Shown: one piece after another, positions 1,729-30,000 of the stretch | How positions within the stretch are numbered: position 1 is the stretch's first letter | Layout: every line of letters begins with the position of its first letter | The notes under the pieces: generated by a model | The model's database searches: none | The model's input: the letters and a program-made list of their open reading frames with translations, nothing else | What the model was told of the DNA's origin: nothing | DNA from: Bugula neritina | Lineage: Eukaryota > Animalia > Bryozoa | Direction: 5' to 3' | Length of the DNA stretch: 64,000 nucleotides | Assembly (NCBI GenBank): GCA_964035545.1 | Contig: OZ037771.1 | Location: 11,412,480 to 11,476,479 of the forward strand | Position numbers and translations under genes: made by a program

Positions 1729-4700
1729 TTAGGTTGGTTTGTAACATTTACAGAGTCGTATCAATACTCTAGCACCAGTCTTGAAGTCATCATATGCTTT
1801 CCATTTACACTTCTGACTGTAATGTATTTCATATCCATCACAGTCGTTATTCCTCCCTTGAGCCAGAGCTCCATCCATCTGGGTGTACTGTCCACACCGG
1901 CATATTCTGGAAGATAAGAGTTTGTTATTAAATTATGTTTAAGTATTTTATTTCAACTAGAAACTGTCCACACTGGCGTATTCTGGAACAATAAAAACTG
2001 CCAAATAGTAAATTAAATAATGCAACCACATTAAGCTGTTGCTTTTACCATTTATGCATAATAATATGATACATGAAAAAATTACGTTTTTCAAGTACGA
2101 GTTAAATGCTTTGATAAATATTCCAAATTGTAATTACTAAGATAAGATCAGTATGGTTAGAAATGTCAAAATTGTAATTAATTGTCCATTTTATCTGCTG
2201 GGCAGATTACAAGTTTTGGCTCCCAAAATATATACATTAATTGGCTGAATTGTTAATGTATGACCTAATGGCAGGATGCATATATAAGATTGATTACCAT
2301 ATTTGGTGACTAACAGTCATTCTCTAATGACTTATTTTTGTGACTCATTTAGATTGTTTTGATATACAGCTGATTAATATAGGCAGCTATAATAATAATA
2401 TAGGAAGTTGATTGAAACAGGCTTAATGCTAGTTTTTAACTATAACATTCGTTATATATTTCCTTGAAATTAATGTTTTAATACGATTTATATAAACCGG
2501 AGAAGGAAAATTTTTTTTAGCTTTTTATATATAGCACCTTTTAAGACACATAATGTAGCTTGCTTTATGCCACAAAAGTTGTTTAATGCTAAAAAAGAAT
2601 GCAATCATTTATACAAAAAATATTATAAATAATTGTTTCTTCTAAAGCAATATAGAATTATGATATAATATTTACATCATACAAATTTATCATATCGACA
2701 CCTTTTTCATGCAAAGCTGAATTATCAGATATATTTAATTTTCAAGTTACCAGATGACTGAAATCAAAGTAATGTTTACTCAAGAGAATTTTTTTAAATT
2801 AAGTCATTTTTGAACAAAACTCGCTAAATAATGATTTTTAAATACAATCTATAGTTGCTTGTTACTTCTGATAGATAGATATTGTTTTTGTTTTCAATGC
2901 ATTTGTTCAAAACATTAATCCATGCATATGCATGTTGCATTTGTCTATATTAGATAAAAAAAATTTATTTGATAAAATCATTCAACAGTGATTTATTATT
3001 GATAACTCAAGGTGCTTCAAATAGCAATGCATAAACTATAAAAACTGGTTAAAAATATATTTTCAACTCTTCTTATGCATTTTTATACTCCGAAGATAAA
3101 ACGCTGCTATGCTGGAAAGCCAATAGTTTCAATAAATATATTTTTACGAAGTAACTCTTTTTTATATATCAAATGTATTTACCTGACAAGATGTTTCTGG
3201 TATATCTTGATGTACTGAACCTGTGATTCACACTGAGAGCTGTAGGGATTGTAGGTCCGCACATGCTGCTCCTTAACAGTTGACCCTGACCTACAATATA
3301 AGTGGCTCAGTTCTATTATAATAATTATAAATATGTACCCGTTGCACGCTCATGATTATTCAATAATAGATTATTAAATGAAATGTGTAACATAAATATG
3401 TATAGCTGTGTAAATATTCTCCATGAAATCATTTTTCTTACTAGTTATTCACTGTTTGAAAAGTAGTTGAAAATAAAATTTAAACTGAAACAATTTTACC
3501 GTAAAAGTCACAAGCTTTCAATTTATAAACAAAGTTTTAGTTACTTGTAACTTGAAATAAGATCAGCAACATTGTTTTGTTTTTATAAATCATTTTGTAA
3601 AGTACATTTGAAACTTTTAATATAGAATGCTGAACCAGGTTGTAGTAACTTTCAACGGCCTTTATAAGCTTGCTCAAAATTTTAATTGTTCCACCTAGAA
3701 ACTTTCCCAATTGCAAACAGAGAACCTTTGAGTATTTTCTAGTGCTGCCAATAAATAAACCTTTTACGAGCACACCATATCAATAAACAGCAATATCCTG
3801 TACTGCTTAATGAATAGCATGTGTACCTCGTTGGTTGTCTGCGATAAATGCACTGTTTACTTCCGTGATGCTCTATAGCCACCGGGTATTTGTTGGGATG
3901 GGACTGAGGCTGTGAGTCATCGCTATCTTCGGCCTCATCTGAGAGCTGTGACTCATCAGGGCCAGAGTAAGCTGGACCTTGAATAGCAGATGGATGAACA
4001 CTTGCAGACGCCGTACCTGCTGCAGACTACAAAACATGGATAGAGATCTTACTACTCAGTCCTAAATTCAGTTCACAGCTAGTGATGTGCATTTTTATGT
4101 AAATATATTAAGCTATATGCATAGAGTAGAGTAGATTCAGCGTTACTACATGTGTTGTGCAAGCATATAGTTTATATGTTCACAAGTTAGTAATACATTA
4201 AATATTTAATATTGGTATACTGTAGCCTATATGTTTTAGTAAAATATACAATACAGTAGGCTACTGCACAATTTGACCAACTACAGTGTTGTATTTTTTC
4301 CTAGACACACTTTGCCGCACTATAGGCCGCAACAGCAAAAACAAAATGGCACTGCTGTTACGTTTCGTCAACATGCGTTCACACACTGAACAAAATGTAT
4401 AACGCATCACGCTGGACTGTGACCAATCATTATTAAGCTAATTCTTTTTTTTGCAGTGACTCATATGTTTTTGGGTATTATTCACAAATTTGTCGCAACA
4501 TTCTTCTCTTAAGATGTGATGTAGATGTTACGGACTAGATAGTAACAATTAAAGACGAAAACTCTCTTTTAAATATATATTCCTAAAATAATTGTGGAAA
4601 CTAATTAGAAGAATAAATATTTAAGCCACCCATTTAATTTTTAGGTTTTAGGTTTGGTGTTTTTGTAATTAGTGAAATAAATATTTTTTGGAACTATGGA

Positions 4701-5494
4701 ACTGAGTAAATTAAATCAACAATAGCTACTAAAATAAACCAGCCGAAAAGATTCTTTACATTTTAGTACGATGTCAACTCATTGGGTATAGCTGTCCAAT
4801 AAGTAGACATAGATTTTGCCCAATCGCGGACTTTGAGAACGTCTCTCTGCCCAATAGGAGTCCGACGTGATTTTTTGAATCAAGCAGTGTTTGATCATCG
4901 CCGCAACGTAAACCGGGGTGCGATTCAGCCCGGATGTTAATAAAAATGGCTGAGATTTGTTGTTGCGGTGTACGATACGGCAAAGTGCGTCTAGGGGATA
5001 GAATGTATAATTCTACATATCATGATTAGCACAAATTGAACGATACAATAAGGCTACACCTTAGCTATGACTAAATACAGACTCTGTGGCATGTTTGCAA
5101 CCACTGAACTGAAACTATAAGTTATAGTTCAATGTTTGCAACTGTCCAATATCATTGAACACAAAGCACCATTTGCTTACATGTTTACTCATTAGAATAC
5201 AATGTAATGTATGAAATTTACCTGCCTGTCCGTATAATTGTGAGCTGTCTGAGTAAGGCTTCCATCTCTACTCTTTGGACTTTGAGATAAATATAACTTT
5301 GATTGGTTGAAAATAAAGTTTCTCGCACAGTTTGGGTTTGGTACAGTTGAGTAGTAATAGTCTTTGGAATCTCCACTGAATGAGCTACCCTGCCCTTCAT
5401 ATACGCTGACATCTGAATTCAATGGCATAGAGTTATACGATTTAGTCAATGCTCGACCCAGGCCCGAGGTACTTCCTGTTTGACTTGAATCCAT
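1729..5494 (-). CDS. Uncharacterised protein, tandem paralog 1 (252 aa) with C-terminal duplicated H-x4-C/C-x-C domain
   Basis: Exons 5494-5222, 4026-3827, 3290-3183, 1906-1729; all GT-AG and phase-consistent (0,2,2). Spliced C-terminus: HPNKYPVAIEHHGSKQCIYRRQPTRSGSTVKEQHVRTYNPYSSQCESQVQYIKIYQKHLVRICRCGQYTQMDGALAQGRNNDCDGYEIHYSQKCKWKAYDDFKTGARVLIRLCKCYKPT*. Same exon structure as paralogs 2 and 3. Confidence 0.88.
4300..4995. mobile_element. MITE-like non-autonomous DNA transposon in intron 1 of paralog 1
   Basis: ~40-bp imperfect terminal inverted repeats: CCTAGACACACTTTGCCGCACTATAGGCCGCAACAGCAAA vs rc of right end CCTAGACGCACTTTGCCGTATCGTACACCGCAACAACAAA; no coding capacity. Confidence 0.7.
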
Positions 5495-7042
5495 TTTAAC
5501 TCGCCCGCATGCATATACATGTATACGTGCTACTTTGAAGGTGTAGTGCAGTTGTGCAGTGCAATTGTATTCTTATTTAAATTGCTGAGAAGTGGTTGCA
5601 TCATCATGAGATAATACTGGACTTTGCCTGAACATGTACGCAACAAATTCCCAACCATTCAATATTGCTGCTACATGTTTTCATCATGTAGAGATCTAAC
5701 AATTACATCTACATTGTATATTTTCAGTCCAGGCTTGTTTCTTACATACTTATTAAACGTTTCTTATTGTCTATAATCTACATCTTTATAAAGTTTCCTA
5801 ACGTACACATATCTCAGCACTGTGATTTGTCAGCACTCCTGCAAGTCAGCAACAGCTCTCTAAGACAACTGGCAGCAGGTAAACATGACTTTCACAGGAT
5901 TTATTCAAGTTAATGGCTACCATAGAGTATAAAACCAAACTACGTTAAGATATGAAGCACAGTGTATTTGTTAAACACTAACTTACAGCACAAGGTAATT
6001 ATTGTACAATTCCAAACAAGTGAATCACAAACACTAATTAACACAACATGTTGAGTGTTTGTTATGTTTATGATGGGATATATGCTTTATATAAAGAATA
6101 CTGATTGTGTAATGAAACAGCATCATTGCATATTGTAGCACATGTATTAATGATATAACAATGATAACATATCTATGATCATTATCTAAGAATTAGAAAC
6201 TATTTGATGTTGGCAATAAAAAAGCAAAAGTTACAATTCTTATTATAAAATACAATAAAAGAAATCGCTTGTTGAAATGATTCGAAAGCCGCAGCAGGTA
6301 TAAAAATCACTAAAGTTTTAGTACATATTGCATGCTATACATAAAAGTTAGTAGCAATAGTAGCAATACTATATATAAAAATAAGTTTGTATTTAAGTGG
6401 TAATATATATATATAAAACTGAATATAGCTGTGATGTAAAATCATAATTATATCAAGTGAGTCACAGGTATGGCATATAAAGCAAAAATGCAATCAATAA
6501 GAAATATAATATTTTTGAAATGAAAATATAAATATTCTACAAGAGTGCACCATAGTCTTGGGATGTTATAGACACAAAATGAATGAATCAAATGCAGTCT
6601 ACAGTGAGATAGTAGTTAAATGTAGTAAAATAATATGTAGGTTGATAAAACATAAATACCCATTCCGAAACAAAATAAAATACTGCTCAACTCTAATAAA
6701 AGTTTGTCATGACGCATAAACTTATAATTGCATAGAAACTTATCAAATTGAAAAATGTTGATTGAGTTGTTGGCATGGTAACGGTATCTAGGAACTTTCT
6801 CAAAACTTATAAAAAAATAAAAGGTATATATTTCTATCTGTGTAGGTGTAGAAAACCTTTTCCAGTCAACTGGACACATCAAGAGAGTGTTTGGAGCCAC
6901 CCTTTTATCACAAAAATTAGCAAAGTTTACAGGCTATTGTATGAGGCAGAGCATTGGGGAAGACAAGTTTTTTCTAGAAAGACAGCTGTATAATATGCGG
7001 CTAAAAAATTGCATAAGAATTTGAAATTTGTGTATATTGCGA

Positions 7043-8932
7043 TTAGGTTGGTTTGTAACATTTACAGAGTCTTATCAATACTCTAGCACCAGTCTTAAAA
7101 TCATCATATGCTTTCCATTTACACTTCTGACTGTAATGTATTTCATATCCATCACAGTCGTTATTCCTCCCTTGAGCCAGAGCTCCATCCATCTGGGTGT
7201 ACTGTCCACACCGGCATATTCTGGAAGATATAAGTTTGTTATTAAATTACGTTCAAGTATTTTATTTCAACTAAAAGCTGTCAACGCTGACATATTCTGA
7301 AATATATATGTTCATCATTAGTATTTTAATGCAACTAGAAACGAAGTCAGTTAGCTGACTTGCTGATGGTTAGTATTGAGTGCTTATCAATTTCAGGTTT
7401 ATAGTCAAAGCAGGCTACGCCCAGACCAGGATGAAAGAAATTATCACAAAATTTGTAAAATCATAAGAATGACAATGCAGTATTTTGTGTTTGCACAGTG
7501 CTTTGTCAGAAGAAATGAAGGAGATGACGTGAAGGAGATGAGAATGCGTGACTAGTCAATAATTAATCACGAGCAAACCGTTTTAATCTTTTAATTTATT
7601 GATCCTCGGTCTGACCAATGAGAAAAGAGTGAAATTTCTTATATAAGCTTCGTTATGTAAGCAAAGAGTTTCCAATACTTCATACATGCAGGCGTTATAC
7701 AAAGTTCCAATTGACCTGATACAAGACGACAAAGTGTCATTTCACTGGCCAGCGGTGGAAATTCTACCCCATAATCATCATGAATATTATAAAAAGATAA
7801 ACCATTCAATTTTTTACTAGTGTTGAAATAGTACCGACCAATCACGACCCACAAAATTATAAAAAATAGTGAGATTTACACTGACTGCACCAGAATAGCA
7901 ATATCATTAAGCAACCATATTACATAGCATACAAATGTCACCCAGCTGTAAATGTTATGCAGACTTTTCTTATTGGTTGCTGCTAAATTACGAAATTACT
8001 CGCTGTTGTTTACTCCATTAACTATGCAATGTTTATAGCAATTTTTATGAATGCATGTAATCTGATTTAGAGGGCAACATGTATCCCTAGGCCATCAGGT
8101 TATCAGATAATTGTTGTTTTGACAGTTGTTATCAGTATAGTGTATAATGCAAGTGTAGTATACAATGAAGTGAACTCTGGCGCTGGTATGGAAATAAAAT
8201 TAATATGTTTATCAGCCATGAATGTTAATTGTAAAGACATGACATGGTTTGTGAATGAAGCAGCATGCTGCCTGCTACTGAAGACTTGTCTACTTGAATC
8301 CTGTTAACTACACCTACCTTTAGACTCCTAAGTGATTTAACATTTATTTTTCTAATGAATCATAGAATATACAATCCTTTAGATTACCACCCACCTTTAA
8401 ATGTTACCACCCACCTTTAAATGTTACTACCCACCCATGATGTTGTGGAGGTTTGCATTACAATGAGTCAGATTTTAATGGGCTTTTAATGGGCGTGTGT
8501 TAGTAATCAAGCAGGCCAAGGGGGTATTGCACTATAACGCCCCTTGATACCTTATGTGTGTAGTAAAAGTCTATAGTAAAACCTGACTAAGAGAGAGGGA
8601 GTTGCTACCAGTCTACACTCACCTCACCAAATCTTTCTGGTAATATTTGACGTGCTGAGTCTCACTACGACTTTGTGCTGCTAGTGGGTCATAGACTGTG
8701 TTCTTCATTTGCTTTACCTTCACCCCTGACCTAAGGACAAATACTGTATATATGAATATATTGATACTAACAACATTAAGGGATATACAGTCAGTCACTA
8801 AACCTTGATACTGGCTACTGGCTACTACCACTACAACTACCACTACCACTACCACTATCACTACCACTACCACTACCACTGCCACTACTACTACCGCTAC
8901 CGCTACCGCTACCGCTACCACTACTACTACTG

Positions 8933-8969
<37 letters not shown>

Positions 8970-10415
8970 CACTACCACTACTACTAGTACCACTGCCACT
9001 ATCACTACCACCACTATTATACCTTGTCGGTTGTCTTCTGTACATGCAGTTCTTGTTGCCGTGGTACTCAATTTCGACGGGAAATTTGTTGGGGTGTGTC
9101 AAATCATCCTCTTCGCTGTCACTATCTTCATAGTCCCCATCAGCATTGACATTGTTAGCAGCATTAGACCACACACTGTTCGTAGATGTCATTGGAGTCG
9201 AGATGGAGGCAGCTAACATCTGATTCGTCAAATCAGCAATTGTGGAGCTCTAAAATTATCAGGTATTTGTTTCTTTACCAACAAACACAGCCGAAAGTCT
9301 AGACACAAAGCAATGCACCAAGTTGTCTATACGCAGAGTCTATAAGAACTTTAAACTATCCTCTAAATGACCGAGTAGACAGCATGCAGGCAGTAAAACA
9401 AGCTGTTAGAATGATATATTTTAGCAGTCAAACAACAAAACCCTGTTAATCTCACAGTTAATCGTGGGTTCCTTTTAGCCTACTGGTTGGCAAATGGCGG
9501 ACTTTACGCAGTTTAACATATAGCTGGCAAAAAGGAGTTGCAAATCAAACAGCACTAAAAGATGACTACTAAACTTAGTAACTGAAAATTCAGTTTCACT
9601 AACAAAAAAAAGCTTTCTTATAATCAATACTAACAATCAAACTATTAGCAACACTTCACATTCAAACTGAATTGCAATAAATTTGTCTTCATACTCACAT
9701 TATTAGTAACAGCCGAAATGTCGCGTAGTGGAAAGCCTGGAGGAGGTATCAGAGGCCCTTCGTAGCCCCCTGTAGGGGGTGAGACCGGTGGTCGAATGTA
9801 TCTTACGTTGGATACGCTAGCAGGTGAACTACCACTGTTTGTGCCAGACGTTGTATAGACTGGCTGGTCAAACACCTGAAAGCCTGAGGACTGGTAATGT
9901 GATGGTGGATCGTGCTGCAACGACGGTTGACGGCCAAATCCAACTGGAAATCTTTGTGTTTTAGAAACTCCGCTATTGTGAAAGTAGCCTTGTAACTGTG
10001 GTCTTTGCTGTTTGTTGAAACCTCCTACACCGGCAGCTAAGGAGTGGTAGCTGTGCTGTCTCTGCAGGTGAGTCGGCTTCACCCAAGCCTGTGGTGGCCC
10101 TTCATTGCTGCCAAAGCTGTGCTGCCTCTGATTAAAGAGAGGGTCACTGGGAACTTGAAAGTCACGGCTATAGTTTTGAGGTAAGTGCTGATTATTCTTC
10201 GTAATTGCACGTCCCAAGGTTATGGCAACACTATTACTACTAATACTACCACCGACAACTGGGCTAGTAGTAGCAGTACTACTACTAGTACTAGTAGAGC
10301 AAATTGAAGAAGTAACTGAAGTTCTTACTGTGTTAGGTTGATGTTCTTCTAAAACTCTAGCCGATTCCTGATATACTGACGCCGGTGAATCATAATCAGC
10401 TTCAGTGCTTGTCAT
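7043..10415 (-). CDS. Uncharacterised protein, tandem paralog 2 (409 aa) with S/Q/P-rich N-terminus and the same Cys/His domain
   Basis: Exons 10415-9699, 9249-9023, 8730-8623, 7220-7043; GT-AG, phases 0,2,2. Contains HPNKFPVEIEYHGNKNCMYRRQPTR|SGVKVKQMKNTVYDPLAAQSRSETQHVKYYQKDLVR|ICRCGQY...LIRLCKCYKPT*. Confidence 0.9.
7335..7874 (-). mobile_element. Non-autonomous Helitron
   Basis: On - strand begins TCTCACTATTTTTTATAA after an A. Ends with hairpin AAGTCAG-CTAA-CTGACTT (7344-7361), 5 nt, then CTAG followed by T. This matches the Helitron 5'-TC / hairpin-CTRR-3' / A|T signature. Confidence 0.65.
8820..9015. repeat. Compound (CTA/CCA/CCG)n microsatellite just inside the exon-2 donor of paralog 2
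   Basis: ctaccactac/ctactacta runs; source of the poly-V, poly-Y/H and poly-SG ORFs. Confidence 0.95.
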
Positions 10416-10561
10416 TTCAACGATAATAACGCTCAATATAAAAGATTAAGTCTCTTACTAACGAACCTGTCGTTTCGAGCTCAAATTGAATGAATGAAAT
10501 GCTCCTAGCTTTCGCGTGTCTGTATTTATCTGTTAAAACCACGTGGGCTGGCTGAATCATT

Positions 10562-10571
10562 GGAAAATCCC
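10562..10571 (-). promoter_or_regulatory. NF-kB consensus site about 150 bp upstream of the paralog 2 ATG
   Basis: rc GGGATTTTCC fits GGGRNWYYCC; a second match GGGAATCCCC lies at 11477-11486; motif match only. Confidence 0.35.
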
Positions 10572-12440
10572 ATTAGTAATACAGACCTGCCATATTACTG
10601 TTTATCACAAATCGACCTCAATTTTTTAAATATATTTTTCAACATTAAAAAGTATAAATGAATTATAAACGCGTTGCTGTGTGAAAAGCATACTTAAGAA
10701 TGGTGTAAAATTTTTCAGTCATAAATATAACTTCACAGGTATATCTTAAATTTTGTAACCTGTTAAGTGTGCTACAAGATAATAAGTAGATCACACATCA
10801 TTGAGTTAACTAATGTGTAAGCTAAACATTTATTATTAGCGTATTTATTTTTCTTAGGTAACTTTTTCTACAATCTCTCAGAGTGAACTATCGTGATTAC
10901 AGTGGATATAGAAAAGCTATGAAAAAAAGATATTGATAACAAGTAAGATATTCTCAAGGCAGTCAAAGATTTTCTTTCAGCATTGCTGCACCAAACCGAC
11001 TTATTTTTAATTTGGTATAAGAACAGGTAAATTCTCCACACTCACACTTATTAAAACACTCACAACTGTTAGCAGTGGACACAATTGAATTTGCTTAAAT
11101 TGATACTGTATACATTTTTACAGTTAACGAATTTATCAAAAATAGTAACTATCAACTATCAAACAAAATAGAATTAATTAAAGTAAATAGTGAGTGAACA
11201 ATCAATTTCTATAATGTGTAATTTAGTTGAGTAACTAATCAATAAATTTTGTGAATGAAAACCTTGCGCGATTATGGAGTAAAGATACTTGACACATCTG
11301 TGCCCTAAGAAATAAACTAGGTCAAAAGTAACAATGATCAAGAGTAAACAAGCTGCATCCAGTATCTTCGCCTATATGTGAACTAAGAGTACGTGTCCTC
11401 ACTTTACACTATCAGTTATCACTCTGTTGATAATTGAGCCATTTTTCTTACTAAATGACCTTGAACTATCAGAATAGGGAATCCCCTGTTCACTTAGGAA
11501 GACAGGAACTTATTCTGATTGTGAAGGGGAAAATTATTATTAGTTATTATCAATTTAACAGGAAAGAAATTGAAAGGAAATAACTTTCAACACCTTTTTG
11601 ACAGTTAGAGATTTATTTTTCATTTCATATTTGTGTAATGCTTGTGCAATTCTTACATGTAGCTTTATTATTGAAGTTATAAAATATATGTCACTATGTG
11701 CTTGAAATGTAAAACAAATTATATAAATATTTTGCAACTGATTTCATAAGAAACTAAACATAAAATACTAAACTAATGTAGATTTTAAAGGTTTCAAATA
11801 AAATTCTACTTATTTATAAAAATTACAGACTTTCAACCTTCTAAAAAGTAAATTATTGGCTTTACTTACTTTTAAGATGATTCATATTTTATATGCAAAC
11901 AGATTTGTGACCTTATTTTTCAAAATGAATTGACTTGTGGGACATGCTATTTACTTGAATAGAAGTTTTCTAAAGCAAATTATTTAATCAATGAGTATTA
12001 GCTTTGAATTATTGAAAGTATTGATTCATAAACTGTGAGTATTCAAACTTTGGCTGATTGCACGCACTCTATATAAATACACTCATTTAGAGAAATTCAC
12101 AAATTACTATAATATAACTGTTTACTGTTTTGTCAGCTCATAACATGGTTGCCAAGTGCAACATAAGACCATTTCCAAATTTTCCATAGAATGAATCTTG
12201 TACCAGAGTACAGGACCTGGGGTCATGGACAATGTGACAGGAAAGTTTATTTCACATACAGAGATGTGGCTGCTATTTTAGCTAGAAAAGTGTCCCCACC
12301 AGTAGAGCTGTAAGATAACATACCTATATTACTACAGATCTAACCAAGCTGAATTACTGCTGCTTGTTCTACTTCAGAAAAAATGATGGTTTTCTTGAAA
12401 GTGTCTAGAAATACTGTTGAGCTCTCATAAATACATCACT

Positions 12441-12657
12441 TATGCCAATATAACTAGTGTATATTATATTATATATATTATATAAGATACAGTATAGTGA
12501 TGCCAATATAACTAGTGCATATTATATAATATATATAAGATACAGTATAGTGATGTCAATATAACTAGTGCATATTATATAATATATATAAGATACAGTA
12601 TAGTGATGTCAATATAACTAGTGCATATTATATATTATATATATAAGATACAGTACT
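12441..12657. repeat. Minisatellite, ~52-59 bp unit x4
   Basis: Repeated TG(C/T)CAATATAACTAGTG(T/C)ATATTATAT...ATAAGATACAGTATAGTGA. Confidence 0.9.
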
Positions 12658-13788
12658 GATGAAGTTTATTATAGGGTGTGTAATACAGATGCAATGCTTT
12701 GTTAGCTCTAAATATTGGGATTCCTGGCAAATCATAATATAAATACTTTAAAAAATGCTTGTCATCATTATCCAAGCAGCACATGATGATCATTCATAGA
12801 TTCACTTTCATTGTATTACCACATCTTTCACGTGATATTGAATATTTCATTGATATGCGCTGGGTGTAGCCTTCCCAATGATAATGTACCTGTATGCATA
12901 ATAATGCTTAATCTCCCGGATAAGAGCTATGATGGTGTAGATGCAGTAATAGAGAAATTGAGAAAAGCCTGCGTTCTAGACTAGAAATGTAGCATAAGAA
13001 GTTATGTTCTGGCAAGAATTTTAACCAGTACCCCAAACTAAAATTTAATTTGTAAAATATAGACCTTAGGCTATCTTAATTTCTCCCTTAATGAGAGCTA
13101 TGGAGGCCATCATATTCTGAGTTTGCAGAAAATTTTTAAAAATTGCAGAAATTATAAAAAAGTAGAGACAAATGGCTCATTTCTTGCATATATTACCCAC
13201 ACTTTCCTGATTGCTACTGTACTGTATCTAGCTAGGTCTGTGACAGGCCTTCATAATATAATATAATTGCATATTGGTTACAGCATTGACAGAAGTCCCT
13301 TATAATAACTGGTAAAATCTTGCATTAGCTTGTGATAGTAAACTTGTAAACTTTCAATGATAAGTTCTATAACATAGAAGGTGCAAAATATTGGTAAAAC
13401 AGGGCACTGCTTAATGAATCATAATAATATGTCATTCTTACACTGTAATCAGTTTACAACATGACTACGGCTAGCAGGTGATTGACTTCACTAAAAATAG
13501 CAGCAGCCGGTCAGTGACCTTGCCTAATTTGGTTATGGCTAGCCATTGAGGAAGTATTTGAAAGAAATGAGTGACTTTTTTGATAATTTATTCAAAATCA
13601 AAACACTGGAAGTTTTCACCAGATATCACACTGCAAATTTTACAGCATAGATGAGTCGGAAGCACTAATTTTGCGTTTGAGCACAAAAATTCCATTAGTT
13701 AGGAGCAGGGTTATTTTTTTTAATATACCTCTAGTGGATAGGCTTAAATTAGAAATTGCCATACAAAGTTAAGTATCAAAGCTCCACG

Positions 13789-13931
13789 CCAAAACTAGAA
13801 ATCAAAACATGGTAAATATTTCCACCTTTATTCTCAGTAGTGTGACTCATGAAACCAAAACTAGAATTCAAAACATGGTAAATATTTCCACCTTTATTTT
13901 CGGTAGTGTGACTCATGAAACCTAAACTAGA
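13789..13931. repeat. 66-bp tandem duplication, each copy containing TGACTCA
   Basis: CCAAAACTAGAA(A/T)TCAAAACATGGTAAATATTTCCACCTTTATT...GTAGTGTGACTCATGAAA x2 plus a partial third copy. Confidence 0.9.
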
Positions 13932-15929
13932 TCAGGCTGGCCCAAGTCTGGTTTAGACCAAATCTCATTTCATCAGAGTTTTTCTAGAAATTTCTTCTGA
14001 AGCGTGTTGGTATTTTTATTGCACTGTGCCTAGTAACCAGCAGTTTTATCTATATTTACACAGCGTTTTGTTCTATTCAATGACCGCTATTCATAGTATT
14101 CAGTCACGCGTGATGTTTTTTCATTGGTTTATTGCGCAACCATGTCGCAATGTAGTGAATCATCGTAGCCTAGCATTTTCCTTGCACGACTAGAACGAAT
14201 GCACTGTACATTCCCGTGAAAACCGAAGTAAACAAAGGGCTGAAATAACCCGATATTAGTAAATAAAGTTCGTATGCTTTAGCGGGCAAACTTCTTATCT
14301 CTCCTTATAACCTAAGTAGCTCTTACTATTATAAAAATATGTTTTCTTTGGCGGTTGGACCTAAGTTTAATAGTATTATTAGTTATTCATACCATCATAA
14401 GCCTTTAGTATCCTTACAATATCCACAAAAATTGCTATGTTTGAGCTCTGCTTGTACTTTAGTAATGTCCCTAAAAGCAAATCATTTATGTACTACTTTA
14501 TTACTATTATGTGTTTGTTATACCTACCTTGCTGATACAAACTCTGGCAACAGAAGTAGCGGCAGCAGCAGCAACAGTGGCATCGCAACCATTACCAGTG
14601 GCGGAAGTTATATAAAATCCACTAAATAAATCAGTGCTACACTAAAAGTTCAGTCTTCACTTTCTCAAAGCTATTAGTCAAATGAGTTGCATATAAGGAA
14701 ATATAAGCATAGCTGCTCACTCAGTTGGGAAGGGAGCATATACCTTCATACCACACTTTAGCATTGAGGCTACATAAGTTGGTCAGTTTCATTTTAGTAA
14801 TGATCTATTATATCGTCTAATTCCAGCTTTTGTGTTGCACATAGTTATTATATAGTCATTAATTAGTCTAGTGGCACATTGAAACTCTAATCTAAATGCA
14901 CCTTATTATAATATTGTAGAAGCATCATTTCAAAATTAAGAGTTGTCTTCTACTCTGTAAATGATGTTTTTGTTGTTTAATTTCAATGGAAAAATTACTT
15001 GGGCTTGGTAAGGAACTAGTGGGTGTGTTCACAAGCATTTGGTATCAATTAAAATTTATTATTGTACAAATCACTTGACACAAATAATTTTTCGGTCATT
15101 TCTATTTTGTGATATAGTGCGCGTTAGCTATTAGCTGGTTGCTATTTGGTATTAGCTATAGTTGCTATTTGCTATATGTAGAATTCAATAGAACAGCCAT
15201 GCTACGCAGTACAATGCATTAAATTTTGTTGTAAGTTGTAGTCACCATCATACACTGCTATGATTTGCAGTCAGTAATATAAAAGCTCAATGTCAGTATA
15301 AACTAACTGTTTACGACACTTGCTATATATAACTACTGCTGTTGAGTAACACAGATTTGAACTTCATACAAATTATGACTCTTGATATAGATATACAAAT
15401 AAGAAAATTAGAAGGTAATTTCCGTTAAACTTCAATATATTTGTGTAATAACTCAAATGAATTTTATTGAAACCTGACCTAAATTGATCAAAGCATACAA
15501 TATAAAGTTTCAAAAATATTATTTATATATTATTTAGTTCGAAATATAATTAATTATACTAGCAAGAACTGCCTTATAATACTGCATAAAAAGCAATAGT
15601 ACGCATGTATAAAAAGATGAACGTGAAATAAACTGAGTAACAACGTTAGACAATAATCTAGAGAGTAGGTTAATAATCAACTTGTAAAAGAACTATAAAA
15701 ATAAAATGTGGAGTTAACTAGCATCGGGAGTTATCCCACACATTTCTTGAGTATTTTCTCGTATTAATACTAAAAGCTAAATAATAAAATACAAATATAA
15801 CATCAACAATAAAGACTAGCAACAATAAAATGTCATAATAAGGCAGCAAAAATATGTTATATAAAATAATGCCATAAAAGGCTTAATTTGCAATTTACTT
15901 TGCTTATAGCATGAAGCAATATGGGAATT

Positions 15930-18033
15930 CTAAAATGGTTTGTAGCATTTGCAAAGTCGAATCAACACTCTTTGACCAGTCTTAAAATCATCAAATGCTT
16001 TCCATTTACACTTCTGACTGTAATGTATTTCATATCCATCACAGTCGTTATTCCTCCCATGAGTTAATGCTCCGTCCATTTGGCTGTATCTTCCACATCG
16101 ACACATTCTAAAATATTTAAAATAATATGACTATTACACAGATTTCTATATTTTAATGGCAAACAAATGCGCAAATATGAGTTTTCAATTACTTGCATAC
16201 TACTCATTTCTCTATAAATTGACCATGTGATGTTTTCAATTGATGTATATTTATAGCTGATACAAATTTAGAAGATCGCATTACCAAGTAGGAAGTGTTT
16301 AAGTTTAAGCCACCCTAGAAATTACCCGAAAGCAGATTGCAAAATCTAACACTGATACAAATAACGTGTTAATATTTATTGCGAAACCAGGATATTATGA
16401 CAAAATATTTATAAAAATATATAATTAATACTCTGTGTGGATGTTTTCAAGTGAAGTTTATTAAAATAGAACTTCATTTAAGTTTTGTAATCGCCTATTA
16501 ATCAAGTTTCCAGTGGGGTAATTCTGGAACTTTCTACTTATAAGTGTGATAGAACATTATAAATCATATCAGAATAGGAAGACGAGATACGCTATCTGTC
16601 ATATCAAACATTACTGGCAAGTGTTGACAAATTGTGAAGGTATTACCTAATAAGTATGAACAATTCTGGGCATCCCCTATGACTGTGTACATTTCCTACG
16701 AAGGAAGATGCATGTAACCCCAAATATAACCCCAACTCATTTTACTTCCTTTAACGTTACTCACGAAAACTTTAAACTCTTCTTTCCGTATTAGAAAATG
16801 ATTCAGCCCTACTAAACATTTTATAGTTGGAAGTTTCAGTTTGATCGCCATCAATATTACATTATCAATAGCCTAGGATTCTCTAACTCTCACTACACCA
16901 TGGTCATCACTGTGTGTCGTCTCTTAGGCTAGCTTTACCACCTTCAAACTCGAGCATTACTCACCTAACTAAATCTTTCTTGTAGTACTTGATGTGTTCG
17001 GTGTGCTGCTTGTTTTGTAAGGTCAGGGGGTCGTAGACAGTCACTGTCTGCTGCTTTACCTTGGGTCCTGATCTAAATGTAAGAAGTGTTTTATAAAATT
17101 AAATAGAAATGTATGAATGCATTTGCCAATGTAAAACCAAATTGTTTAGTAAATATAAATATAAAACAAACATTTCTAATTCAATTTCCATAGTTCAAGT
17201 GTAAAGTCTGTATCACCGAGCTTACCTTTTAAGCTGCCTTCTGTAGGAACAGTGTGGGTTGTTGTGATATTCTATTTCAACTGGAAACTTGTTTGGGTGG
17301 GATGTAGACACCCCTGTCTCCTCATCATCACTGTCCTCTGAGGCTAAGTCAGGGTCAGACCAAGTGCTGGGAGGAGATGGGGGGGTTGGTGAAACATTCA
17401 GTCTAGTTAGAGCTCTGGTCAAGTCCTCAAAGGGTGGATTGTCATTCTATAGAAAGAATAAAAGTGTTGTAGCTAACTTAGTTTGGTGGCTTAAAGTAGA
17501 AACAAGTAATGAAAAAACATAACTATTTGATTCAATAAACCGTAAATTATTTATTCTAGAAAAATGCCATTGTTTAACGATAAATGTTGTATGATACTTA
17601 CAGTAGCTGTATTTAGTTGGTAGAGATGCTGAGATTGGTGCACGGGGTTCATCGGATACTCTGACGGTAGTGGTGCGTGATGCTGTGGAGGATTTACCAT
17701 GCTTGGAACAGCAGGCAGCTGTTGTGTAGAGGGCACCTGCTGACACCACTTTTGCTGTGTCATTGCAGACGGTGCAGTGTCCAAGTTTGGGTACTGCCAG
17801 CTCTGATATTGCTGGAAGGGTATGTAGGGGTGAGGAGCAGTCTTCCCGAAGAGGCTGTACCCACTCCCTGTAGACATCTGTGCACACTGACCTTCTACTG
17901 AGCTGTTCCCATTGATATCTAATGCAGGTTTAACCTTGGTGATGGCTCTCTTAGTTCCAATCGCTCCAAAATGTCTGCCATGTGGCTCTGTTGCGCTGTG
18001 CACGTGATACGGGGTTAGCTGAGACCACGTCAT
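15930..18033 (-). CDS. Uncharacterised protein, tandem paralog 3 (~312 aa) with Q/P-rich N-terminus and the same Cys/His domain
   Basis: Exons 18033-17602, 17446-17226, 17072-16965, 16107-15930; GT-AG, phases 0,2,2. HPNKFPVEIEYHNNPHCSYRRQLKR|SGPKVKQQTVTVYDPLTLQNKQHTEHIKYYKKDLVR|MCRCGRYSQMDGALTHGRNNDCDGYEIHYSQKCKWKAFDDFKTGQRVLIRLCKCYKPF*. Start codon less certain. Confidence 0.87.
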
Positions 18034-27025: not shown

Positions 27026-30000
27026 ATGGCGACTAAAATGAGTTATGCTCAAGTTCAAACGGACAATTATAGAACGAATTCGAGGCCAATCTCTAGTACT
27101 TCCTCCTCAAGAGGCTCAACTACCCCAACATCTAATTTTGATGGACTGGAAATTTCCGAAAGCCGAGAACTTTCTTTAAGTAGTAACAGAGCTTTAACTC
27201 GGCTTTTACAGAAAGGAGTAAGCTGTGAGGAAAACAGACGGAGGGAAAGATATCCGTCTGCTTCTAGTAGGATTAGCACACTGAGTGAAGGTAAGGGTTA
27301 GTCACAAGCACTTAACTCTCCTGTCATCCCAACATGCAAGTACCTGATACCTTGTCATACTTGTCATACCAATATCTAATATCAATTTGCGGTAATCGCT
27401 TGGAAAAGCCCTTTGACAACCACCATGTTTGGGTGATAACAGCATTTCTTATAACTATTTCAACACAGATTGCCAGGTATCCAAGTGCAAAATTGCAGTT
27501 TTATGGAGTATTGTTAGTATTAGTAGAACTTTTCAACATTAGAGTTTGTCATACCCTAAACTGAGGGAATCTCATTTCAAATTATAAACCTAAGTAAAGC
27601 TAAATTTCACAATTTACATAATCAAATTTGCAAAGGCTGTTTATAATTTAATATGAACTGTCCTTTTCTACCAGCCCACCCATGGAACCAACTCTCAGAT
27701 GCTCCCGTAAAGTTTAGTGAGAAACTTGATATGGCTATGCACCCATGGAGTAAGGTGTTCACGCACTATATACATGTGTCACACACTATATGCATGTGTC
27801 ACACTATATACATGTGTCACACATTATATACATGTGTCACACACTATATACATGTGTCACACATTATATACATGTGTCACACATACACATGTTTCACACA
27901 TTATATACATGTGTCACACATTATACACATGTGTCACACATTATATACATGTGTCACACACTATATACATGTGTCACACACTATATACATGTGTCACACA
28001 TAATATACGTGTGTCACACACTATATACATGTGTCACACACTATATACATGTGTCACACATTATATACATGTGTCACACACTATATACATGTGTCACACA
28101 CTATATACATGTGTCACACACTATATACATGTGTCACACATAATATACGTGTGTCACACACTATATACATGTGTCACACACTATATACATGTGTCACACA
28201 TTATATACATGTGTCACACACTATATACATGTGTCACACACTATATACATGTGTCACACACTATATACATGTGTCACACACTATATACATGTGTCACACA
28301 CTATATACATGCGCTTTACACTTAAATGAATGAAGAGTCTAAAGTTTAAATATACATTTATTTTCATTTGTGTGGTCAATTGAAGCTTAAAAACTGATTG
28401 AAAGTGACCCAGGATTTTTGTTACTCTTATTTTCAGCATCCTAAACAATTTTTTTCCTAATAAACAGAAATGGTGACAGTAATGTAATATTAGGTGACCA
28501 GTTAATTAGTTTGGAAAAAAATTGAATTATTTGATAGCTAATTGGCAGGCTATGCCATGAGTAAACTGTTTTCCATACTATAACTACATGCCTACATGAG
28601 TATAATTAAACTACAGTATTCAATTCACTTGCGAAGTACACCATTCAAAGCAAACAATGCATTTACTAGCTATTATAAATTGGAATATAATTTGTTTGAA
28701 CCCGGTGCTTACATTAAGAGATTATGACACTCTATCAAAGACTACTATCATGATCAAGATGAAGTACACTTTATGCTACACAACTAGTGTGTAATGAGTC
28801 TCTAGTGTATGTGTAGGCTAAGTCTAGTAGCTGTACTATAGTCACATTTAGGTGCAGTATAGTCAAGAAATTCTAATAACCTATGTTATTTTTATTTCTT
28901 TTAATAAACTTTGGTACCTATGTAGGCCTATTGGGTTGAAATTCTTGTGAAAACATAGCTTCTTTTGCTACAATTCTAGAACACAGGCTTTTCTCAGCTT
29001 TTCCATTGCTGCACCGCCTCCTATTCACAGGATGGTGGCCAACCAAGTCATTTGAATATTACTAATACAGACAGCTAAACCAATATAGAGCACTATAATA
29101 GCCTTAGAATTTTTTCAGCATGCATGTTACTATAGACTATTATTAACTTGATTTACTTTGAACATTTTTAAAATTTTAGTGAATTTTTATTTTTAAGCTA
29201 ATTGTGCTCTGACGAAGGTTTAATATCACATGTTAAGTAATATGAGTTACATAGCATGCTATGTTATATTATATTACACTTTATGATAGAATATAATATA
29301 ATATTATGTTCTATAATGATTATAATATTATATAATATAATATGTTGTAAAATATAAATGTTTATATAACATAGGCCTATGTTACTCGCAAAACATATAT
29401 AATTTTTTTACTCTGGATATGTCATGAGATACAAAGCATGTACTTAGTGCTTCTAGCCCTACTCTTGCTCTCTATTATATATATTATCAGCGTTATAATT
29501 TTTGTACTTGGCTACACTGTATTACATAGTAGACATCAGTAAGCTGCTAAGGCTATTATATGGGTGATAGCGCATAGCTACAAGAAAATAGCTTGAAGCA
29601 GCACTGAGTTAGTGGTCACTGAGTGCATTGGTTGGGAGTCTAGAGTTTTAAAGTTTTAATAAGATGTCTATGCACTCTGCCTTCAGTCACCCCAACTTGG
29701 TGCTGTTTTTAGAGATTTCCTAACTATAGCTGGTCACCACATTCCCTTCACCCAACAGTTAGTAGAAGTATGATATTCTCAGTTGATTACATACTTAGAG
29801 ATTAGCTTGAGTATGATTAGCCAAGTTCATTCTGTCAGTTGTATTAGTCTCACACTGCAGGTAGATATATTATGCTACAGAGCTTGTGTGCGTCAACATC
29901 TCTTTGAAAGGATTTCTTAGGCCACATATTTACATAACTGTGATAGATTTCTAATTGATTCCATCATTGAAATGGAACATGCATTTCAATCCAGTGAATT

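What the first reader, a model, noticed from the sequence alone, without database searches (positions are those of the whole stretch)
1729..18033. Tandem trio of genes encoding an unrecognised ~120-aa Cys/His domain (best candidate for a novel system)
Seen: three - strand genes share a 4-exon layout (phases 0,2,2; exon 3 = 108 nt and coding exon 4 = 178 nt in all three). Their S/Q/P-rich N-termini are unalignable and differ in length. Each then has an acidic patch followed by HPNK(F/Y)PVxIExHxxxxCxYRRQ..RSGxxVK.....Y(D/N)P..........KxYxKxLVRxCRCGxYxQMDGALxxGRNNDCDGYEIHYSQKCKWKAxDDFKTGxRVLIRLCKCYKP. There is no signal peptide or TM segment. The ORF track misses the domain because it is split over three exons. 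Inference: an intracellular Zn-binding module on a disordered activation- or scaffold-like arm, as in a transcription factor or signalling adaptor. I do not recognise it as a known Pfam family.
Basis: partly seen in the sequence, partly recalled or inferred. Interest (0 to 1): 0.85.

Follow-up and report, generated by a model that had tools for sequence, protein, structure and literature searches.

The report
Bryozoan two-zinc domain gene family
Three neighbouring genes in a bryozoan genome belong to a family, so far seen only in bryozoans and in two uncharacterised large DNA viruses, whose conserved end is a probably zinc-binding domain with no detectable relative in sequence or fold.

Summary
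Three minus-strand, four-exon genes (252, 409 and 312 aa) have canonical GT-AG introns in phases 0, 2, 2. Exon 3 is 108 nt and coding exon 4 is 178 nt. Each encodes a disordered S/Q/P-rich arm, an acidic patch and a basic (net +11) domain of about 120 aa.

The trio is part of a larger family. The array has five tandem genes, and the genome holds at least eleven, including three about 105-aa versions without the arm. The genome is close to Bugula neritina, which has the same three genes in the same order.

Eight Cys/His residues are invariant, arranged as two H-x4-C...C-x-C units. No Pfam or PDB sequence match was found. An exhaustive HMMER search of 1.84 billion proteins found only bryozoan and metagenomic members. 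A confident AlphaFold model (pLDDT 85) has no fold relative.

Intronless homologues lie on gene-dense contigs that carry a family B DNA polymerase, a UL9-like helicase and a poxvirus-type poly(A) polymerase, so they are large DNA viruses. At least one comes from a marine biofilm.

The arms share short motifs, including PPPGF, a known GYF-domain ligand. Best reading, inferred rather than shown: a nucleic-acid-binding regulator family that viruses captured. Function is untested.

The parts
5222..5494 (-). Gene 1, exon 1 CDS (ATG at 5494; 91 codons; phase-0 donor). Holds the GRALTK motif at 5441-5458.
   Evidence: B. neritina KAF6036550.1 residues 1-91 align here at 86% identity. GT donor.
3827..4026 (-). 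Gene 1, exon 2: end of the arm, acidic patch, and start of the domain (HPNK at 3889-3900; first H-x4-C at 3835-3867). Ends in phase 2.
   Evidence: The RNA-run joint that removes 3291-3826 ends this exon at 3827.
3183..3290 (-). Gene 1, exon 3 (108 nt): the long beta-hairpin insert of unit 1.
   Evidence: AG/GT borders; 97% identical to the B. neritina orthologue.
1729..1906 (-). Gene 1, exon 4 (178 nt with stop): C-x-C of unit 1 (1891-1905) and all of unit 2 (H-x4-C at 1801-1827, C-x-C at 1735-1755).
9699..10415 (-). Gene 2, exon 1 CDS (ATG at 10415; 239 codons; phase-0 GTGAGT donor). GRAITK at 10197-10214; PPPGF at 9732-9746.
   Evidence: orthologue is B. neritina KAF (EB796_005141, P0028).
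9023..9249 (-). Gene 2, exon 2: acidic patch (9103-9126), HPNK (9085-9096), first H-x4-C (9031-9063). An (ACTACC)n microsatellite follows within a dozen bases of the donor, in the intron (8824-9011).
8623..8730 (-). Gene 2, exon 3 (108 nt).
7043..7220 (-). Gene 2, exon 4 (178 nt with stop). Its protein is identical to exon 4 of gene 1, with 3 synonymous differences.
17602..18033 (-). Gene 3, exon 1 CDS (ATG at 18033; 144 codons; GTAAGT donor, phase 0). KRAITK at 17935-17952.
   Evidence: This donor and the next acceptor were chosen by consensus and phase, not seen in RNA.
17226..17446 (-). Gene 3, exon 2: acidic patch (17318-17341), HPNK (17288-17299), first H-x4-C (17234-17266).
16965..17072 (-). 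Gene 3, exon 3 (108 nt).
15930..16107 (-). Gene 3, exon 4 (178 nt with stop). Against genes 1 and 2: dN 0.08, dS 0.83-0.92.
   Evidence: B. neritina EB796_005142 (P0008) is its partial orthologue.

Best explanation
Shown:
- The three genes belong to a family found so far only in cheilostome bryozoans (Bugula, Watersipora), in environmental contigs that look like bryozoan DNA or mRNA, and in two related large DNA viruses.
- Each protein is a low-complexity arm, then an acidic patch (net -8 to -9), then a basic C-terminal domain of about 120 aa (net +11 to +12, pI 9.4).
- The domain is modelled confidently as nearly all beta.
- It holds two copies of one unit. A beta-hairpin carries His at the end of its first strand and Cys four residues on, at the start of the second. 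A later strand runs into C-x-C.
- In unit 1 a long beta-hairpin, encoded largely by exon 3, is inserted. The arm-less paralogues lack it.

Inferred:
- Each unit binds one zinc through His and three Cys.
- The basic domain binds nucleic acid. I lean to RNA rather than DNA, but only weakly.
- The arm recruits effectors through short motifs: a GRAITK-like motif near the N-terminus and, in some members including gene 2 and one viral copy, PPPGF. PPPGF is the PPG-hydrophobic ligand of GYF domains, used by TTP and ZNF598 to recruit GIGYF-4EHP repressors.
- The proteins would then be sequence- or structure-directed regulators of gene expression.
- The viral copies are host genes captured as spliced mRNA and used to steer host or viral expression.
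For: Family and range:
- Exhaustive phmmer of exon 4 against 1.84e9 representatives found 15 true clusters. All named ones are B. neritina or W. subatra.
- Word-indexed searches with a protein and with a profile added only more of the same.
- 31 metagenomic loci were found. Thirty have low coding density, most of them with the gene in two or three pieces. One is an intronless, mRNA-like contig.

Ligands: eight invariant Cys/His in alignment A1, viral members included. They are kept in the arm-less paralogues.

Repeat: hhalign of unit 1 (insert removed) against unit 2 gives probability 78%, P 1.8e-5, with all four ligands in register.

Fold: AF2 on a 61-row alignment gives pLDDT 85.3 and pTM 0.73. 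His and Cys sit at the hairpin ends and C-x-C directly follows a strand in both units.

Charge and lack of hydrophobic segments.

Selection: dN/dS is about 0.1 for g3 against g1 or g2. dN is 0 among g1, g2 and gA in exon 4.

Motifs:
- PPPGF occurs in 3 of 12 non-redundant arms, and in 0 of 20,000 shuffles.
- PPG-hydrophobic motifs bind GIGYF GYF domains (PMC10187677).
- The genome encodes a GIGYF-type GYF domain.

Viruses:
- P0015 lies 2 kb from a pox-type poly(A) polymerase (PF19244, 50.9 bits) and a UL9-like helicase (PF02399, 67.8 bits) on an 85%-coding contig.
- P0027 lies on a 67-75%-coding contig from the same biofilm sample as a colinear contig carrying PolB, helicase and PAP.
- P0027 groups with two Watersipora paralogues, support 90/89.
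Against: - Zinc binding, nucleic-acid binding and every partner are untested.
- I could not inspect model coordinates. That the four ligands of a unit meet in space is inferred from sequence order and secondary structure only.
- A cross-braced arrangement of the four ligand pairs is not excluded.
- PPPGF is absent from genes 1 and 3 and from most members.
- The one complex prediction tried (GYF domain with the gene-2 peptide) gave no verdict.
- The repeat test used a hand-cut insert anchored on the ligands, which favours the result.
- The RNA joint has short sides (26-27 nt), was laid at 85% likeness, and comes from one sample.
- The position of viral P0015 in the tree is unresolved, so the direction of transfer is not settled for it.
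- The host of the viruses is unknown.
Confidence: 0.5

Rival explanations
1. It is a DNA-binding transcription factor. The two units are divergent WRKY-GCM1/FLYWCH-type zinc fingers, where a beta-hairpin gives two ligands and the end of a later strand gives two more. The Q/P/S-rich arm is an activation domain.
For: The ligand spacing H-x4-C-x18-22-C-x-C in unit 2 and in the arm-less unit 1 resembles C-x4-5-C-x22-23-H-x-H of WRKY, which I recall from memory. The strand positions in the model fit this. The domain is strongly basic and follows an acidic patch.
Confidence: 0.2
2. It is a protein-protein adaptor or scaffold with no nucleic-acid role. The zinc domain is a structural interaction module and the arm is a hub of docking and phosphorylation motifs.
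For: The arms carry conserved short motifs and a CK2-like acidic Ser/Asp patch. Arm-less paralogues show that the domain works as an autonomous module. Viruses often capture adaptors.
Against: A net charge of +11 on 119 residues is more typical of nucleic-acid binders, but this is weak evidence.
Confidence: 0.15
3. The family came from the viruses. A viral gene entered an ancestral bryozoan genome, gained introns and expanded. The host genes are domesticated viral genes.
For: The family has no relatives outside bryozoans and these viruses. The two viral proteins align along their whole length, arms included, at 33% identity. That suggests long residence in the viral lineage. P0015 is a long, unplaced branch.
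Against: Host diversity is far greater: at least 11 genes in one genome, including divergent arm-less forms. Intron positions are shared by Bugula-like and other contigs. Viral P0027 nests beside two Watersipora paralogues at 78% domain identity. The viral copies are intronless, as expected of captured mRNA.
Confidence: 0.12
4. The conserved Cys/His residues do not bind metal. They form disulfides or serve another role, or the models are not real genes.
For: No metal data exist.
Against: - There is no signal peptide, so the protein stays in a reducing compartment.
- Two His are invariant alongside six Cys in a repeated pattern.
- Purifying selection acts on the domain.
- Orthologues are annotated in two species, with conserved gene order in B. 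neritina.
- There is an RNA joint and mRNA-like contigs.
Confidence: 0.03

Closest known systems
WRKY-GCM1 superfamily zinc fingers (WRKY, FLYWCH, GCM, FAR1/MULE DNA-binding domains)
   Same: Two ligands flank a beta-hairpin turn about 4 residues apart. Two more, one residue apart, lie at the end of a later strand. The domain is basic, all beta, and sometimes tandem.
   Different: Ligand types differ (H,C,C,C here; C,C,H,H/C there). There is no WRKYGQK-like strand and no Pfam hit. No structural match was found. The resemblance rests on pattern and memory only.
Nanos (C-terminal tandem CCHC zinc knuckles on a disordered arm)
   Same: The architecture matches: a long disordered arm with effector-recruiting short motifs, and a small basic two-zinc domain at the very C-terminus. 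Nanos works as a post-transcriptional repressor.
   Different: Ligand order and spacing are unrelated, and there is no PF05741 hit. The domain here is twice as long and rich in beta strands.
Tristetraprolin and ZNF598 (zinc-finger RNA-associated proteins with PPPGF motifs)
   Same: PPPGF, the PPG-hydrophobic ligand of GIGYF GYF domains (PMC10187677), is present in gene 2, its B. neritina orthologue, two further members and viral P0015.
   Different: The zinc domains are unrelated (CCCH or C2H2/RING there). Most family members lack the motif. Binding is not shown (one search gave no verdict).
MSL2 CXC domain (PF16682)
   Same: This is the only Pfam family that scored at all on exon 4, aligning over the C-x-C-G stretch.
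   Different: The score was 14.6 bits against a cut-off of 26.7, E 0.04, covering 30 residues. It was absent when full-length relatives were scanned. I treat it as a chance match of Cys-rich sequence.
Host-derived genes of giant viruses ('virologs', PMC10583209 title and abstract)
   Same: These are intronless viral copies of a host gene family, one of them nested among host paralogues.
   Different: The captured gene is a phylum-restricted family of unknown function. The viruses are unclassified metagenomic contigs without a known host.

Membership tests
Any Pfam-A family | Score above the family's gathering cut-off | tested here: not met
   No family reached its cut-off in the ten exon pieces and arm ORFs of the window, or in eight full-length relatives. 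The best hit was MSL2-CXC at 14.6 bits against a 26.7 cut-off.
WRKY-GCM1 / FLYWCH zinc fingers | Sequence profile match (PF03106, PF04500, PF03615, PF03101) | tested here: not met
   None were listed at E up to 10 or up to 1.
WRKY-GCM1 / FLYWCH zinc fingers | Four-stranded antiparallel sheet with the zinc site at one end, seen as a structural match to solved members | tested here: inconclusive
Zinc-binding domain (generic) | Four invariant Cys/His per site, close in space, and metal bound | tested here: inconclusive
   Eight invariant ligands in two repeated H-x4-C...C-x-C sets. Their positions at strand ends fit.
Nanos zinc finger (PF05741) | Two CCHC knuckles with Nanos spacing; profile match | tested here: not met
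   No hit. The ligand order differs.
GYF-domain ligands (PPG-hydrophobic motif proteins) | PPG followed by a hydrophobic residue in a proline-rich disordered stretch | tested here: met
   PPPGF is at window 9732-9746 in gene 2 and in P0004, P0026, P0028 and P0015. No shuffle of 20,000 reached this count. The motif is absent from genes 1 and 3.
GYF-domain ligands (PPG-hydrophobic motif proteins) | Physical binding to a GYF domain | tested here: inconclusive
   Complex prediction of the genome's own GIGYF-type GYF exon with the gene-2 peptide scored 0.10 against a mark of 0.34. The tool gave no verdict.
Large eukaryotic DNA virus (Nucleocytoviricota-like) for contigs L020 and L057 | Virus-type replication and mRNA-processing genes on gene-dense, intron-free DNA | tested here: met
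   PF19244 poly(A) polymerase at 50.9 bits (cut-off 30.2), PF02399 helicase at 67.8 bits, a family B DNA polymerase, and 67-85% ORF coverage. A capsid gene was not seen on the stretches held. For L021-L023, membership rests on gene density, the shared sample and GC content, and one shared gene with L020.

The most novel reading that the evidence does not exclude
The domain is a new zinc-binding fold that arose within Bryozoa (or in their viruses) by duplication of a roughly 35-residue His-Cys3 unit. It defines a lineage-specific class of gene-expression regulators. Its capture by a previously undescribed lineage of large DNA viruses, which have a delta-like PolB, a UL9-like helicase and a pox-type poly(A) polymerase, gives the first molecular link between such viruses and bryozoan hosts.
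Probability: 0.35. Interest if true: 0.8.

Novelty: new variant of a known kind. Interest (0 to 1): 0.62.

Why it matters
- Phylum-restricted protein domains with a confident model but no fold relative are uncommon. They are direct entry points to lineage-specific biology, and bryozoans have almost no functional genetics.
- The family is expanded, tandemly arrayed, under purifying selection and homogenised by gene conversion. This argues for an important, dosage-sensitive role.
- Two related large DNA viruses carry full-length, intronless copies. This suggests the protein controls something worth hijacking.
- The viral copies also give a sequence marker for finding, and assigning hosts to, an unclassified virus lineage in marine fouling communities.
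- If the PPPGF-GYF link holds, the family would be a new class of adaptors for the conserved GIGYF-4EHP repression machinery.

Tried and rejected
- **Pfam on single exons and on full-length relatives:** nothing above cut-off.
- **PDB by sequence, single and profile:** nothing. Sep15 at E 1.3 is noise.
- **ESM Atlas by features, twice:** no usable hit.
- **First AF2 run with 8 sequences:** pLDDT 55.7, so it was not used for fold searches.
- **Fold searches with the good model:**
  - Foldseek against PDB: best E 0.066, TM 0.23 or less.
  - Atlas: TM 0.43 or less.
  - BFVD: nothing.
- **IMG/VR viral contigs:** no relative of the domain.
- **Own genome searched with the viral poly(A) polymerase:** no match, so there is no sign that the virus is integrated there.
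- **Complex prediction of the GYF exon with the gene-2 PPPGF peptide:** no verdict. It counts neither for nor against binding.
- **Paper searches for run accessions:** only SAMN08714533 was found, a marine biofilm. The other accessions gave nothing relevant. A search for bryozoan large-virus papers found none.
- **Depth in the laid runs:** it peaks over the gene-2 exons, but the tool warns that contig depth cannot rank parts of a gene, so I do not use it.
- the joined (spliced) window proteins were not sent to any search or fold tool. Searches used single exons by reference, and database orthologues stood in for the joined sequence. Joined models were built only inside local scripts, for the alignment, tree, charge and dN/dS work.

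Full report
**1. What is in the window**

Translating the minus strand shows the quoted motif three times, each split over three exons. I built complete coding models with GT-AG at every border.

| Gene | Exon 1 | Exon 2 | Exon 3 | Exon 4 | Length |
|---|---|---|---|---|---|
| 1 | 5494-5222 | 4026-3827 | 3290-3183 | 1906-1729 | 252 aa |
| 2 | 10415-9699 | 9249-9023 | 8730-8623 | 7220-7043 | 409 aa |
| 3 | 18033-17602 | 17446-17226 | 17072-16965 | 16107-15930 | 312 aa |

Intron phases are 0, 2, 2. None has a hydrophobic stretch, so there is no signal peptide or membrane segment. The arms are 11-21% Ser and also rich in Gln, Pro and Thr. The 25 residues before the domain carry net -8 to -9. The 119-residue domain carries net +11 to +12, pI 9.4.

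**2. Support for the splicing**

- Bugula neritina protein KAF6036550.1 (P0003) maps onto gene 1 exon for exon at 86-97% identity.
- Two runs labelled RNA-Seq, both from one sample of a close relative (about 8% divergent in non-coding DNA), hold a contig that skips exactly 3291-3826. That is GT..AG on the minus strand. The DNA run of the organism itself does not hold it. The sides of the joint are short (26-27 nt), so this is modest evidence.
- A paralogue on contig C2 has exons 2 and 3 fused in one frame. Several environmental contigs have other intron subsets.
- Three independent assemblies share an mRNA-like contig with the same 5' end, and one has AATAAA plus an A run at its 3' end. This contig encodes the uninterrupted domain of another species.
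- Gene 3's first intron rests on consensus alone.

**3. The family is larger than a trio**

The window lies on contig C7 of a 216-Mb assembly. A six-frame search of that assembly with exon 4 found nine matching places. A local profile scan of the regions fetched around them added two more. The genes are:

- Two further full genes 18-30 kb upstream of the window, on the same strand, making a five-gene array.
- One copy on C2.
- Two divergent copies on C7 at 14.73 Mb.
- Three tandem two-exon genes on C6 that encode proteins of only 101-106 residues. These have a short acidic N-terminus and the domain without the long insert.

In B. neritina the orthologues of genes 1, 2 and 3 carry consecutive locus tags, EB796_005140 to 005142, so the order is conserved.

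Exon 4 of genes 1, 2 and the upstream gene A is identical in protein, with 3-7 synonymous differences. The last 60-80 nt of the preceding intron are 87-93% alike, while exon 3 is only about 45% identical in protein. The B. neritina copies share their own variant of exon 4. This is concerted evolution by gene conversion. Gene 3 against the others has dN 0.08 and dS 0.66-0.92, which indicates purifying selection.

**4. Taxonomic range**

An exhaustive phmmer of exon 4 against 1.84 billion representative proteins gave 17 hits. Two are bacterial or phage repeat proteins. Every named true hit is from B. neritina or Watersipora subatra. Word-indexed searches with a full-length member and with a 36-row profile found nothing new in kind.

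A scan of JGI and ENA metagenome contigs gave 31 loci. Thirty have low coding density (0-31% in ORFs of 100 aa or more), and most carry the gene in two or three pieces, so they look like bryozoan DNA in environmental samples. One is an intronless, mRNA-like contig. I saw no member from another phylum. The tools cannot exclude more distant relatives.

**5. The domain**

In an alignment of eight diverse members, exactly eight Cys/His are invariant. They fall into two sets with the same pattern: His, four residues, Cys, then after 45 or 18 residues Cys-x-Cys. A ninth Cys (in NDC) is not conserved. In the arm-less paralogues the two sets are nearly the same length: H-x4-C-x22-C-x-C and H-x4-C-x19-C-x-C.

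MAFFT placed the arm-less unit 1 on unit 2 columns of its own accord. A profile-profile comparison of unit 1 (insert removed) with unit 2 gave probability 78%, P 1.8e-5, with all ligands in register. My cut of the insert was anchored on the ligands, so the test is not fully independent.

An AlphaFold2 run with 8 sequences was poor, at pLDDT 55.7. I then built a 61-row alignment from database members plus single exons of the window, of other loci of this genome and of the metagenome contigs, all given by reference. With it, the model of a Watersipora member reached pLDDT 85.3 and pTM 0.73. It is all beta apart from one short helix between the units. In both units His ends one strand, Cys begins the next, and C-x-C directly follows a later strand. 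Unit 1 has an extra long hairpin, encoded largely by exon 3.

I could not read the coordinates, so zinc geometry is inferred, not measured.

**6. No known relative**

- No Pfam family passes, by exon or by full-length protein.
- No PDB sequence matches.
- The ligand spacing recalls WRKY-GCM1 fingers. That is a resemblance from memory, and neither sequence nor whole-domain structure supports it. Single units could not be tested.

**7. The arms are not featureless**

Nearly all long members have a GRAITK-like motif near the N-terminus: G-x-[IV]-G-x-R-x-I-x-K in the Watersipora forms, and GRALTK, GRAITK and KRAITK in genes 1-3. An acidic Ser/Asp cluster abuts the domain.

PPPGF occurs in gene 2 (9732-9746), its B. 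neritina orthologue, two other members and one viral copy. That is three of twelve non-redundant arms, against none in 20,000 shuffles. PPG followed by a hydrophobic residue is the ligand of GYF domains. PPPGF motifs in TTP and ZNF598 recruit GIGYF-4EHP repressors (PMC10187677). The genome has a GIGYF-type GYF exon. A complex prediction of that exon with the gene-2 peptide gave no verdict.

**8. Viral homologues**

Two database members are not bryozoan genes.

P0015 (285 aa) is an intronless ORF on a 19.7-kb contig that is 85% coding. About 2 kb upstream of it lies a poxvirus-type poly(A) polymerase catalytic subunit. Directly upstream of that lies a 1033-aa helicase related to herpesvirus UL9.

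P0027 (319 aa) is an intronless ORF on a 67-75%-coding contig. That contig was recovered at over 99.5% identity from three assemblies. Its neighbours have no Pfam match, but one is homologous to the gene next to P0015.

A 36-kb contig from the same sample and with the same GC content carries a family B DNA polymerase (nearest solved: Pol delta). It also has the helicase and the poly(A) polymerase, colinear with the P0015 contig at 45-60% protein identity. That sample, SAMN08714533, is a marine biofilm metagenome (PMC6355793).

These are two related large DNA viruses of the Nucleocytoviricota kind. No capsid gene lay on the stretches I held, and I did not classify them further.

Both viral proteins keep the whole architecture and all eight ligands. 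In a maximum-likelihood tree P0027 is sister to two adjacent Watersipora paralogues (support 90/89, 78% domain identity). P0015 is a long, unplaced branch. The two viral proteins align over their full length.

Capture of a spliced host mRNA is the simpler reading. Transfer the other way is not excluded. The viral poly(A) polymerase has no match in this genome.

**9. Reading**

Shown:
- A real, expressed, selected and expanded gene family.
- A confidently modelled domain with eight invariant ligands and no detectable relative.
- Motif-bearing disordered arms.
- Copies in large DNA viruses.

Inferred:
- Two zinc sites.
- Nucleic-acid binding, from the charge and by analogy with Nanos and TTP.
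- Effector recruitment through the arm.

I put about 0.5 on 'zinc-dependent nucleic-acid-binding regulator with arm-borne effector motifs'. Within that I lean to RNA over DNA only weakly.

**10. Procedure note**

Exons were searched one by one by reference, and database orthologues stood in for the joined sequence. On the viral contigs I only observed and compared.

Noticed in passing
G000:C7:11382481-11402480 (loci L015, L011), just upstream of the window: Two more full family genes lie on the same strand (gene A at L015 2611-442; gene B at L011 2786-1426). The array therefore has five genes. Gene B has a diverged linker and ends in YSTKLE instead of YKPT.
   Followed up: partly
G000:C6, locus L019 4686-5153, 6452-6918, 8666-9167: Three tandem two-exon genes encode 101-106-aa arm-less versions of the domain. 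They have a short acidic N-terminus, no long insert, and CPCG in place of CRCG. Two further divergent copies lie on C7 at 14.73 Mb (L018 1637-1777 and 4962-5135); their upstream exons were not found.
   Followed up: partly
window 8824-9011: An (ACTACC)n microsatellite, about 31 copies, lies within a dozen bases of the gene-2 exon-2 donor. Read through in frame, it gives a long Ser/Gly run, which inflates the mechanical ORF 8815-9231. The B. neritina annotation of the orthologue (P0028) mis-splices here and drops the first H-x4-C.
   Followed up: partly
window 4150-5150 (intron 1 of gene 1): Summed contig depth is 10-100 times that of neighbouring bins in the DNA run as well as the RNA-labelled runs, with many discordant joints and loose ends at 4300, 4851 and 5099-5134. 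This suggests a dispersed repeat or transposon fragment inside the intron.
   Followed up: no
protein P0030 (NCBI, MAG of Chloroflexota): A 316-aa NAD-dependent epimerase has, as its last 30 or so residues, the exact C-terminus of this family (QKCRWKAYDDYKTG...CKCYKPL). This is almost certainly an assembly chimera between bacterial and bryozoan DNA in a metagenome bin.
   Followed up: no
window 27650-28330, 32800-33210, 51030-51960, 54820-57380: Long minisatellite arrays give spurious repetitive ORFs of up to 850 aa. GC skew is strong at 54-58 kb (0.36).
   Followed up: no
L020 3406-6507: The viral UL9-like helicase has a weak LAGLIDADG_3 match near residues 942-985 (E 0.002, below cut-off). 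This may be an intein or homing-endonuclease remnant.
   Followed up: no
L021 3137-3583 and 3710-4156: Two adjacent 148-aa ORFs of equal length lie next to the viral family gene. Neither has a Pfam match. They may be tandem paralogues.
   Followed up: no
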